From Setoptus koraiensis (taxonomy: Eukaryota > Animalia > Arthropoda), in assembly GCA_048013815.1 (NCBI GenBank), contig CM106585.1:14260001-14324000 (forward strand): a stretch of 64,000 bases of DNA, in the 5' to 3' direction. The position numbers and the translations under genes are program-made. Below are positions 27,168 to 28,593 of the stretch, in pieces (within the stretch, counting starts at the first letter, position 1; every line of letters begins with the position of its first letter). The notes below the pieces were generated by a model. That model saw only the letters and a program-made list of their open reading frames with translations, ran no database searches and had not been told where the DNA came from.

Positions 27168-27879
27168 TTTTCTGTCACTGTGTATTGTTTCTCTCGCAAA
27201 AGTTGTGATTTTACAACTGAAGATTTTCTACTTGCGTGTGCGTGGTGTCTGTCGTGGCAAGAGTTTTTAACACGTACTTTAACGAGCATTTCAATTCAAT
27301 AATCTTATCAAAAGGTTTTGTCTCATCGTTTTCTTGATCGGCATAGTCTAGTCTGGTTTGGCCGATATCGAGATGATTATGTTGTCTCGACATCAAAATC
27401 GTTTTCTCGGCATGTGTCGACATATTGGCCGCCCACCGGTACAACAGCCTCTGGCCTCTTCATCATGTGGGCGAAAAATTCGCAACAACACTGTTTGTAT
27501 TTGGCGCGTCGAAGTTAACTCGTCGCGCATGCACTGTTTCTCACCAAATAACATTTGTACATTTTTGTATACCGAGATGGATTGGAGAGATTAATGACAT
27601 CTTTTTAATACAACACATATTATCAGGCCACCATTTATGAAATCCTCATTAGGGTCCTCATATATTCAAATTCAACCAACGGCTGTGTACATTGTGTGTC
27701 ACTCATCCATTTATTTATTCCAACACATATATCTTACTTGGTAACGTCGTCACAATCTCACATACGCAACAACAACAAACATGCCGAAAAAGCATGCTGA
27801 CAGAGATTTCGAGGACAGCTCTGATGCCAGTCTAGACCAAGATGATGAGGAGGACGAGCCAAGCGAAGATGACGACGAC
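27168..27879 (+). repeat. Left arm of ~712-bp inverted duplication (upstream region + first 33 codons shared with Spt5)
   Basis: Base-by-base reverse complement of 31951..32661, with only three difference sites (27186, ~27311-27313 including a 1-nt indel, 27524). Confidence 0.97.
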
Positions 27880-28593
27880 AATATGCAAAAGAACAAAGGA
27901 TCAAAGAGAAAGCAAGACTCATCTAGCAAAAAAGGTAAACCTCAGGACGATGTTGTTTTGCTGCAACTACCAGCCTCATCGGCAGCGGCGGCAACTGCTC
28001 TGTCCAAAACTAAAGGAGGACCTAAAACAAAACGTGGTAAGGCTAGACCAAGATTGACCAATTCAGCTAATGCTATCACTCCATGGAAATCGTTGCAACA
28101 TCATTTTATGAGGCATTCTGATGTAAAACAAAGGCCCGACAAAAAACAAACGATGAGCGAATTGAGCAATGAAGGACTTCAGCGTCGAAATGGATGGAAA
28201 GTTTATCATCTTGCAGGACAAATTGACGATTTGATTGACAATGAATTACAAGTGCGAGATCGATTGAATCAATTATTGAACTTATTTGAGACACAAGCTG
28301 CGAAATTAGTTTATGAATTAGGTCAACAATGTGAACGAGACGACACCCCTCATCCTGATGCTTTCGCCATACTGAGGCGACAAAGAAGTTATGGTAGGAA
28401 TGAATTTAATTCAAATCTTATTGTCGACAAATTAGATGATCTAATAAAAGGACATCTACAGAGGAGTACTTTATTTACAGACCAGATGTTGGATTGCAAA
28501 GATGTCATCATGCGCATCAGCGATGAACACCGTGAAAGAGTGGTCAGGATTATCTCCAAGTCCTTAAACAAACGATCATATGTATTCAAATGA
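27781..28593 (+). CDS. SAP130: SAP130 C-terminal-domain protein (Sin3-HDAC subunit) with Spt5-identical N-terminus, 270 aa, intronless
   Basis: The first 33 aa are identical to Spt5. PWKSLQHHFMRHSDVK...GWKVYHLAGQI and KLDDLIKGHLQRSTLFTDQMLDCKDVIMRI match my recollection of the SAP130_C domain (W...NHFQRYSDVRVK...GWKVHLCAAQL; INELIQGNMQRCKLVMDQI). Confidence 0.72.
   Translation: MPKKHADRDFEDSSDASLDQDDEEDEPSEDDDDNMQKNKGSKRKQDSSSKKGKPQDDVVLLQLPASSAAAATALSKTKGGPKTKRGKARPRLTNSANAITPWKSLQHHFMRHSDVKQRPDKKQTMSELSNEGLQRRNGWKVYHLAGQIDDLIDNELQVRDRLNQLLNLFETQAAKLVYELGQQCERDDTPHPDAFAILRRQRSYGRNEFNSNLIVDKLDDLIKGHLQRSTLFTDQMLDCKDVIMRISDEHRERVVRIISKSLNKRSYVFK

What the first reader, a model, noticed from the sequence alone, without database searches (positions are those of the whole stretch)
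27781..28593. Chimeric gene: Spt5 promoter and acidic N-terminus fused to the SAP130 (Sin3-HDAC) C-terminal domain
Seen: a 270-aa ORF starts with MPKKHADRDFEDSSDASLDQDDEEDEPSEDDDD, identical to Spt5, and continues into what I recognise as SAP130_C. Established: SAP130 is normally ~1,000 aa, mostly low-complexity N-terminal sequence. The Spt5 acidic N-terminal region has been linked to histone binding, and Sin3/Rpd3 HDAC acts co-transcriptionally. Inference: a miniaturised SAP130 captured its neighbour's promoter, start codon and acidic/basic leader, coupling expression of an HDAC subunit to the elongation factor. The direction of donation is assumed from Spt5's typical acidic N-terminus.
Basis: partly seen in the sequence, partly recalled or inferred. 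Interest (0 to 1): 0.85.

Follow-up and report, generated by a model that had tools for sequence, protein, structure and literature searches.

The report
SAP130 gene with borrowed Spt5 start
In this tiny mite genome, a short gene for the SAP130 subunit of the Sin3 histone-deacetylase complex begins with a flipped copy of its neighbour Spt5's upstream region, start codon and first ~57 codons; this is a real, apparently old gene fusion of a known evolutionary kind, and whether it is expressed could not be tested.

Summary
ORF 27781-28593 (+, 270 aa) shares its first 33 codons with the convergent Spt5 gene (28825-32049, -). Its C-terminal two thirds match Pfam SAP130_C (E 2.7e-16).

The shared start is one arm of an inverted repeat, 27151-27882 versus 31948-32678. 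The arms differ by 2 substitutions over 712 nt. Homology then continues for about 25 codons at 75% identity, with synonymous sites near saturation. That pattern indicates an old duplication later homogenised by gene conversion.

Spt5 is the donor. Its N-terminal plan, and its head-to-head pairing with CDC20, recur in relatives.

The junction is not an assembly artefact. A contig from an independent public run bridges it without a mismatch.

- "Miniaturised" SAP130 (211-314 aa) is general in related mites and in Tetranychus.
- The captured leader lies upstream of the conserved Spt5N histone-binding region and is predicted to be disordered.

Two tests could not be done. The RNA runs tried held no reads of this organism, so expression is untested. 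Whether this is the only SAP130 in the genome is also untested.

Earlier notes of this scan report several similar captures of a neighbour's 5' end elsewhere in this genome. Verdict: a new member of a known kind (a chimeric gene formed by partial duplication), of moderate interest.

The parts
27151..27780 (+). Left arm of the inverted repeat, non-coding part: a copy of about 630 bp of Spt5's upstream region (presumed promoter and 5'UTR)
   Evidence: Complementary to 32050-32678. The outer 160 nt are 95% identical. The inner part has 1 substitution (27524) and a 3-4 nt patch at 27311-27313.
27781..27879 (+). Start codon and codons 1-33, identical to Spt5 codons 1-33 (acidic, Ser-rich)
   Evidence: The first difference is at 27880.
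27880..27957 (+). Diverged Spt5-derived tail (codons 34-59, a basic patch resembling a nuclear localisation signal), homologous to Spt5 codons 34-65 with an in-frame 18-nt indel
   Evidence: 75% identity, alignment. Over 21 aligned codons pS is 0.67 and pN 0.16.
27958..28005 (+). Short low-complexity linker of uncertain origin (Ala/Ser-rich)
   Evidence: No significant similarity to Spt5 or to the relatives' N-terminal motif.
28006..28593 (+). SAP130 core: conserved PWKSLQHHF...NGWKV motif region and two long helices (residues 125-185 and 211-262), plus the stop codon
   Evidence: Pfam SAP130_C E 2.7e-16. tblastn E down to 2e-66. 65 of 79 columns conserved at 90% or more in relatives are kept. 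AF2 model.
28624..28629 (+). ATTAAA, a candidate polyadenylation signal 31 nt after the stop codon
   Evidence: Read from the sequence. Motif only, not tested.
28825..32049 (-). Spt5 gene (1074 aa, intronless), donor of the 5' module, convergent with the chimera
   Evidence: All Spt5 Pfam domains present. 60-63% identical to mite Spt5 proteins, including that of Aceria tosichella.
31948..32678 (-). Right arm of the inverted repeat: the original Spt5 upstream region and first 34 codons
   Evidence: Spt5 lies head-to-head with CDC20 (32960-34540, +) as in relative L012/L013.

Best explanation
This is a real and evolutionarily old chimeric gene. A segment holding at least 630 bp of Spt5's upstream region, its start codon and its first ~57-59 codons was duplicated in inverted orientation. 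It was joined in frame to the core of an already short SAP130 gene, replacing whatever 5' end that gene had. The two arms now flank the two convergent gene bodies. Recombination or gene conversion between the arms has kept 27168-27879 almost identical to the Spt5 copy, while the edges escaped and diverged. The predicted product is a disordered leader of about 85 residues (Spt5-derived acidic and basic parts, then a short linker) followed by an intact SAP130_C module. It most likely still serves as the SAP130-type scaffold subunit of the Sin3/HDAC complex. What the capture most likely contributed is a promoter and a working start codon, so the two genes would be co-regulated. The peptide itself is probably a tolerated passenger that may add a nuclear-localisation-like basic patch, not a histone-binding device. 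Shown: the structure, the homologies, the direction of donation, the two-step identity pattern, and the presence of the junction in an independent data set. Inferred: transcription from the copied promoter, translation from the first AUG, membership of the Sin3 complex, and co-regulation.
For: - Inverted repeat and identity step: 2 substitutions over 712 nt, against 75% identity and pS 0.67 in the next 21 codons. The indel in the tail is 18 nt, so the frame is kept.
- SAP130_C hit above Pfam's cut-off.
- The window protein keeps all 20 columns that are invariant across the alignment, and 65 of the 79 columns conserved at 90% or more in relatives. The 9 differences inside the domain are mostly conservative.
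- Donor polarity: the relatives' Spt5 N-termini and the Spt5/CDC20 head-to-head pair in relative L012/L013.
- A 1260-nt contig of run X1 (a different sample and study from the probable source) covers 27591-28850 with 0 differences. Runs X2, X3, X5 and X8 hold 93-100% of the sampled words of 27783-27982.
- The first AUG has A at -3 and is the same AUG that Spt5 uses.
- Human SAP130 residues 924-1048 suffice to co-purify with the ING2 SAID domain (PMC10224958). This fits a short C-terminal module being the functional core.
Against: - There is no transcript evidence. Three RNA runs carrying the species label of run X1 gave 0 reads anywhere on the stretch, so they are no test. Only runs guessed to be RNA hold 17-20% of the words.
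- No sister species with the same fusion was found: identity was at most 58% in the protein searches and at most 50% in metagenome loci. Selection on the fused gene therefore cannot be measured directly.
- The window protein sits on a long terminal branch (0.65 against a median of 0.19).
- A second SAP130 elsewhere in the genome cannot be excluded with these tools.
- The dN/dS estimate rests on only 21 codons.
Confidence: 0.6

Rival explanations
1. One reading: the Spt5 acidic leader gives SAP130 a histone-binding handle, and the shared promoter deliberately couples HDAC-subunit dosage to the elongation factor. On this view the peptide itself is adaptive.
For: The leader is kept in frame, and its diverged tail shows fewer non-synonymous than synonymous changes (pN 0.16 against pS 0.67). 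Both proteins act on transcribed chromatin (established knowledge). Spt5N binds H3-H4 in yeast (PMC8886531).
Against: The histone-binding motif was mapped to a yeast fragment spanning aa 112-233. By my inference this corresponds to the conserved Spt5_N region, window Spt5 residues 98-196, which was not copied. The copied residues 1-57 are variable in relatives' Spt5 and missing from several, including that of Aceria tosichella. They are predicted to be disordered, with pLDDT below 50. The leader does not significantly mimic the conserved N-terminal motif of the relatives' SAP130: 127 of 2000 shuffles score as well.
Confidence: 0.1
2. Same chimeric transcript, but the functional protein starts at the internal Met35 (ATG at 27883-27885), or the leader is otherwise not part of the working protein. 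This would be pure promoter and 5'UTR capture.
For: An in-frame ATG lies at the edge of the near-identical tract. The relatives' proteins need no acidic leader.
Against: The first AUG is the one Spt5 uses in an identical context, so scanning ribosomes should start there. The sequence just after Met35 is still Spt5-derived, so Met35 is not an ancestral SAP130 start.
Confidence: 0.12
3. A decaying or redundant partial copy: a SAP130 fragment that landed beside Spt5 and happens to be in frame, while an intact SAP130 elsewhere does the work.
For: In three relatives SAP130 is not next to Spt5. The relatives' conserved N-terminal motif is missing. The terminal branch is long. The exact protein is not on record in public gene calls.
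Against: The 270-codon frame is open. All family-invariant residues are kept and the substitutions in the domain are conservative. The synonymous divergence of the tail implies the fusion has stayed open for a long time. The window protein branches as sister to the whole motif-bearing clade, so the motif may never have existed in this lineage.
Confidence: 0.15
4. An assembly artefact: the repeat was collapsed or mis-joined, and the Spt5 leader is not really attached to SAP130.
For: Near-identical repeats of about 0.7 kb are a classic source of mis-joins.
Against: An independent run's contig bridges the junction, with 291 nt on the repeat side and 968 nt on the unique side, and no mismatch. At least four further runs from three other studies hold the junction stretch. 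Diverged Spt5-derived codons continue beyond the identical tract, which a mis-join cannot create.
Confidence: 0.03

Closest known systems
Chimeric genes formed by partial gene duplication (for example the Drosophila cases reviewed in PMC3449122 and the X-linked testis chimera of PMC1463047; jingwei and Sdic are cited from my own knowledge)
   Same: The 5' regulatory region, start codon and first codons of one gene are joined in frame to the body of an unrelated gene through a DNA-level duplication.
   Different: Here the duplication is inverted and local. The donor and the recipient are convergent neighbours enclosed by the two arms, and the arms are kept almost identical by gene conversion. 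The recipient is a conserved housekeeping chromatin subunit and not a young, testis-biased gene. No expression data are available.
SAP130, subunit of the Sin3A/HDAC1/2 (Sin3L/Rpd3L-type) complex; proposed structural analogue of yeast Rxt2 (PMC10224958)
   Same: The C-terminal SAP130_C module is conserved. It corresponds approximately to the human residues 924-1048 that co-purify with the ING2 SAID domain (my mapping, from the positions of hits in ~1040-aa proteins).
   Different: The protein is 270 aa against about 1000 aa. It lacks the long low-complexity N-terminal part and positions 1-266 of the Pfam model. Its N-terminus comes from another gene. Binding to Sin3, HDAC or ING was not tested.
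Short SAP130 proteins of related (eriophyoid-type) mites and of Tetranychus urticae (P0001-P0024)
   Same: Similar length (211-314 aa), the same C-terminal module (44-58% identity), intronless genes.
   Different: 22 of the 24 relatives from the word-based search, and a 23rd found in the representatives search (P0158), start with a strongly conserved motif of the form MWYGKQASPASSTSTVDQQEI. The window protein has the Spt5 leader instead, and it branches outside that clade.
Other neighbour-5'-end captures noted by this scan in the same genome (OPA3 to POLG, MRPL14 to IleRS, LMBRD1 to PPCS, akirin to DAD1, Sirt1 to PAN3)
   Same: An inverted partial copy of a neighbouring gene's upstream region, start codon and leader replaces a gene's own 5' end.
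   Different: Those are unchecked AI notes on other windows, and I did not test them. In the present case the arms are unusually well homogenised (about 99.7%).

Membership tests
SAP130 (Pfam PF16014, SAP130_C) | Sequence match to the SAP130_C profile above the gathering score | tested here: met
   E 2.7e-16, 60.1 bits against a cut-off of 27. The match covers only profile positions from about 267 to the end.
SAP130 (Pfam PF16014, SAP130_C) | Conserved core residues (PWKSLQHHF, NGWK, QRSYG-type and QR motifs) retained | tested here: met
   The window protein keeps all 20 columns invariant across the alignment, and 65 of the 79 columns conserved at 90% or more in the 23 relatives.
SAP130 (Pfam PF16014, SAP130_C) | SAP130_C module at the extreme C-terminus of the protein | tested here: met
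   In the 150 best representatives the match generally ends at or near the C-terminus of proteins of up to about 1650 aa, with several fragments among them. The window protein shows the same placement.
SAP130 (Pfam PF16014, SAP130_C) | Physical association with Sin3, HDAC1/2 and ING | not testable with these tools
   Only inferred from homology. For the human protein see PMC10224958.
Spt5 (donor gene) | NGN domain plus multiple KOW domains plus the Spt5_N acidic region | tested here: met
   Met for ORF 28825-32049, where all domains are found. The 270-aa chimera has none of these domains and is not an Spt5 family member. It carries only the non-domain residues 1-57.
Chimeric gene by partial duplication | Two parental sequences of separate ancestry joined in one open reading frame | tested here: met
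   Spt5-derived 27781-27957 and SAP130-derived 28006-28593 lie in one ORF.
Chimeric gene by partial duplication | Donor copy retained intact elsewhere | tested here: met
   Full Spt5 at 28825-32049.
Chimeric gene by partial duplication | A transcript that joins the two parts | tested here: inconclusive
   RNA runs X21, X22 and X24 held no reads of this organism. The library type of the X1 contig that bridges the junction is not on record.

The most novel reading that the evidence does not exclude
This locus is one instance of a systematic process in this streamlined mite lineage. Inverted duplication of a neighbour's promoter, start codon and leader re-equips genes that lost or shrank their own 5' ends. 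Recombination between the arms then keeps the two regulatory modules identical. Here that would hard-wire a Sin3/HDAC scaffold subunit to the regulation of the Pol II elongation factor Spt5, and possibly to shared modification or localisation signals. The cassette enclosed by the arms could also flip without changing either gene.
Probability: 0.2. Interest if true: 0.7.

Novelty: new member of a known kind. Interest (0 to 1): 0.5.

Why it matters
If the gene is expressed as predicted, a conserved chromatin-complex subunit has had its whole 5' control region and N-terminus replaced by those of an unrelated neighbour and then kept for a long time. It would also show two functionally related transcription genes driven by sequence-identical regulatory modules that evolve in concert. 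Together with the similar cases noted elsewhere in this genome, it points to a possibly general route of promoter replacement in extremely compact animal genomes. That idea is testable with RNA-seq and long reads. Taken alone, the event belongs to a well-known class (chimeric genes from partial duplication), and the functional story about histone binding is not supported.

Tried and rejected
1. RNA evidence. Read laying on 26700-29300 with three raw RNA runs carrying the species label of run X1 gave 0 reads. The label is probably that of a host, so this is no test.
2. A 60-nt search confined to the junction failed because the index had too few sampled words there. A 200-nt search found only one run guessed to be RNA, holding 20% of the words.
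3. An exact-protein look-up in public gene calls found nothing.
4. Search for a sister species carrying the fusion:
   - word-based search, best identity 58%;
   - exhaustive representatives search, best 57%;
   - metagenome loci, best 50%.
   None has an Spt5-like leader.
5. I asked whether the Spt5 leader (SSDASLDQ) or the linker (PASS) mimics or preserves the relatives' conserved N-terminal motif. It does not: 127 of 2000 composition-preserving shuffles score as well.
6. Synteny. SAP130 is not beside Spt5 in three relatives, so an ancestral neighbourhood is not shown.
7. Solved structures. A profile search of PDB sequences gave 0 hits. Foldseek of the AF2 model gave nothing at E of 0.001 or better, only generic helical hairpins. 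A chain of a yeast SIN3/HDAC entry appeared at E 0.86, which is not significant.
8. Rfam on 26800-33000 gave no RNA family.
9. A possible 39-nt in-frame GT..AG interval at 27935-27973 looks too short for an intron and has no read support. I did not pursue it.
10. The eriophyoid genome papers held in the library do not mention such captured 5' ends.

Full report
**What is there**

The window holds a 270-codon ORF at 27781-28593 (+) and, convergent with it, a 1074-codon intronless ORF at 28825-32049 (-). The long ORF is Spt5 by every Pfam domain of that protein: Spt5_N, NGN, KOW1-7 and KOWx. It is 60-63% identical to mite Spt5 proteins, including that of the eriophyoid Aceria tosichella.

The short ORF matches Pfam SAP130_C at E 2.7e-16, 60.1 bits against a cut-off of 27. 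Only the last third of the profile is covered, with residues 87-165 on profile positions 267-347 of 406. tblastn with 24 relatives places the SAP130 homology at 28006/28045-28575. It finds no other SAP130-like piece, and no remnant of the relatives' N-terminal motif, anywhere else in the 64 kb.

**The shared start is one arm of an inverted repeat**

Arms 27151-27882 and 31948-32678 are reverse complements. A base-by-base comparison gives:
- 8 differences in the outermost 160 nt, 7 of them in the first 17 nt;
- a 3-4 nt patch at 27311-27313;
- only 2 differences in the inner 569 nt, at 27524 and 27880.

So about 630 bp upstream of the ATG and the first 33 codons are shared. Beyond 27880 homology continues, but at 75% identity and with an in-frame 18-nt indel, up to about 27957. 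This stretch is a basic patch present in both proteins.

Over the 21 alignable codons of this tail, Nei-Gojobori counting gives pS 0.67 and pN 0.16. Synonymous sites are therefore near saturation, while the 712 nt next to them carry 2 substitutions. One recent duplication cannot produce both figures. The simplest account is an old duplication reaching at least to codon ~57, followed by recent gene conversion (or repeated recombination) between the arms over 27168-27879. This agrees with a separate first-stage note on the identity step (s1-338159). The 21-codon sample is small, so the numbers are indicative only.

**Direction of donation**

Spt5 proteins of relatives begin with the same plan: M-P/S-x-DF-I/E-D, an acidic Ser-rich run, a basic patch, a second acidic run, and then the conserved FILDEAEVDD block. 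The leader is therefore native to Spt5.

In one relative's contigs (L012/L013) Spt5 lies head-to-head with a CDC20/Fizzy gene. The window shows the same pair, with CDC20 at 32960-34540. The right arm is therefore in its ancestral place and the left arm is the copy.

In three relatives SAP130 has other neighbours. One metagenome carries its Spt5 and SAP130 homologues on different contigs. How SAP130 came to lie beside Spt5 is unknown.

**Not an assembly artefact**

A 1260-nt contig of public run X1 covers 27591-28850 with no difference. X1 comes from a different sample, study and organism label from the probable source of the window. The contig has 291 nt inside the repeat and 968 nt in unique SAP130 sequence.

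Runs X2, X3, X5 and X8 hold 93-100% of the sampled words of 27783-27982. The diverged Spt5-derived codons after the identical tract also could not be created by a mis-join.

**What the protein looks like**

An AlphaFold2 model built on the 24-sequence alignment predicts:
- residues 1-83 disordered (pLDDT below 50);
- a moderately confident conserved motif region;
- two long helices, 125-185 and 211-262, with pLDDT up to 95.

The window protein keeps all 20 columns that are invariant across the alignment. Of the 79 columns conserved at 90% or more among the 23 relatives, it agrees at 65. Five of the 14 disagreements lie in the relatives' N-terminal motif. The nine in the domain are mostly conservative: D/E, K/R, Y/H, Q/N, F/Y, V/L and S/T. 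This argues for continued purifying selection on the SAP130 module.

Human SAP130 residues 924-1048 alone co-purify with the ING2 SAID domain. The same paper proposes SAP130 as a structural analogue of yeast Rxt2 (PMC10224958). A bare C-terminal module can therefore plausibly do the scaffold job. No solved structure is detectable by sequence or by fold search.

First, the small size is not peculiar to this gene. The word-based search returned 24 proteins of 211-314 aa, among them the annotated T. urticae SAP130 of 301 aa. The exhaustive search shows the module at or near the C-terminus of proteins of about 600-1650 aa in most other lineages. Miniaturisation therefore predates the fusion, or is at least lineage-wide.

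Second, 23 of the short relatives (22 from the first search and P0158 from the second) share a strongly conserved N-terminal motif, SP[AT]SSTST[VIL]DQQE[IV]. The window protein lacks it. Neither the Spt5 leader nor the linker resembles it more than shuffled sequence does: 127 of 2000 shuffles score as well. In a maximum-likelihood tree the window protein branches outside the motif-bearing clade (support 100/97), on a long branch of 0.65. Whether its lineage ever had the motif cannot be said.

Third, the suggested histone-binding role for the leader is not supported. The yeast motif was mapped to a fragment spanning aa 112-233 (PMC8886531). By my inference this corresponds to the conserved Spt5_N block, window Spt5 residues 98-196. 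That block was not copied. The copied residues 1-57 are the variable extreme N-terminus, which several relatives' Spt5 proteins lack.

**What could not be tested**

Expression could not be tested. The three raw RNA runs offered under the species label of X1 held no read on any part of 26700-29300, not even on Spt5. The label is evidently that of a host, and the result is no test. Only runs guessed to be RNA hold 17-20% of the words.

The 270-aa protein is not on record in public gene calls. No closer relative was found that could show conservation of the fusion. No tool here gives access to the rest of this genome, so the "only SAP130?" question stays open.

**Mechanism proposed**

An inverted duplication of Spt5's 5' module was joined in frame to a short SAP130. 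The gene is now most likely transcribed from the copied promoter and translated from the same AUG as Spt5, which has A at -3 in an identical context. Candidate poly(A) signals follow both convergent genes: ATTAAA at 28624-28629 (+), and AATAAA on the minus strand at 28807-28802 (motifs only).

Both arms carry promoter, ATG and 33 codons. Recombination between them would therefore invert the interior without changing either gene. That would explain how frequent exchange, and hence homogenisation, is tolerated. This last step is inference.

**Context within the scan**

Earlier notes on other windows of this genome describe several further genes whose upstream region, start codon and leader are flipped copies of a neighbour's: OPA3 to POLG, MRPL14 to IleRS, LMBRD1 to PPCS, akirin to DAD1, and Sirt1 to PAN3. 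I did not test them. If they hold, the present locus is one instance of a recurrent process, which is more interesting than the single case. The eriophyoid genome papers in the library do not mention it.

**Verdict**

The locus is a new member of the known class of chimeric genes made by partial duplication (PMC3449122 and PMC1463047). Its notable twist is the inverted repeat that evolves in concert. Interest is moderate (0.5).

Noticed in passing
P0001-P0021, P0024, P0158 (relatives' SAP130 proteins), residues about 1-25: 23 short mite SAP130 proteins share an almost invariant N-terminal motif, SP[AT]SSTST[VIL]DQQE[IV], preceded by MWYGKQ-like residues. Its function is unknown, and it is absent from the long SAP130 proteins I inspected and from the window protein.
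   Followed up: partly
window 27151-32678: The two arms enclose both gene bodies, and each arm carries promoter, ATG and 33 codons. Inversion of the interior by recombination between the arms would therefore recreate both genes unchanged, so both orientations may coexist in populations. This needs long reads. It was also flagged by first-stage note s1-338088.
   Followed up: no
window 31948-34540; L012/L013 5667-11087: The Spt5 and CDC20/Fizzy head-to-head pair is conserved between this genome and a relative. Another relative (L014) has NOB1 upstream of Spt5 instead.
   Followed up: partly
window 28827-28850: The two X1 contigs over this stretch overlap by only 24 nt, less than k-1 for a word length of 31 as I recall it for these contigs, exactly between the convergent genes. 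This may be a coverage break, or it may reflect transcript ends if X1 is an RNA library, whose type is not on record.
   Followed up: no
window 45187-45361 and 45611-45785: A direct repeat of 175 nt at 84% identity with a spacing of 424 nt lies inside the region another note calls a myosin heavy chain with mutually exclusive exons.
   Followed up: no
window 25666-26835: A papain-family cysteine protease (Peptidase_C1 E 8.5e-42, with an I29 propeptide) lies immediately upstream of the left arm. Only about 315 bp separate its stop codon from the start of the copied Spt5 upstream region.
   Followed up: no
runs X21, X22, X24: RNA runs offered under the same species label as the best holder contain no read of this organism. 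The label of the holders appears to be that of a host or substrate and not of the mite.
   Followed up: partly
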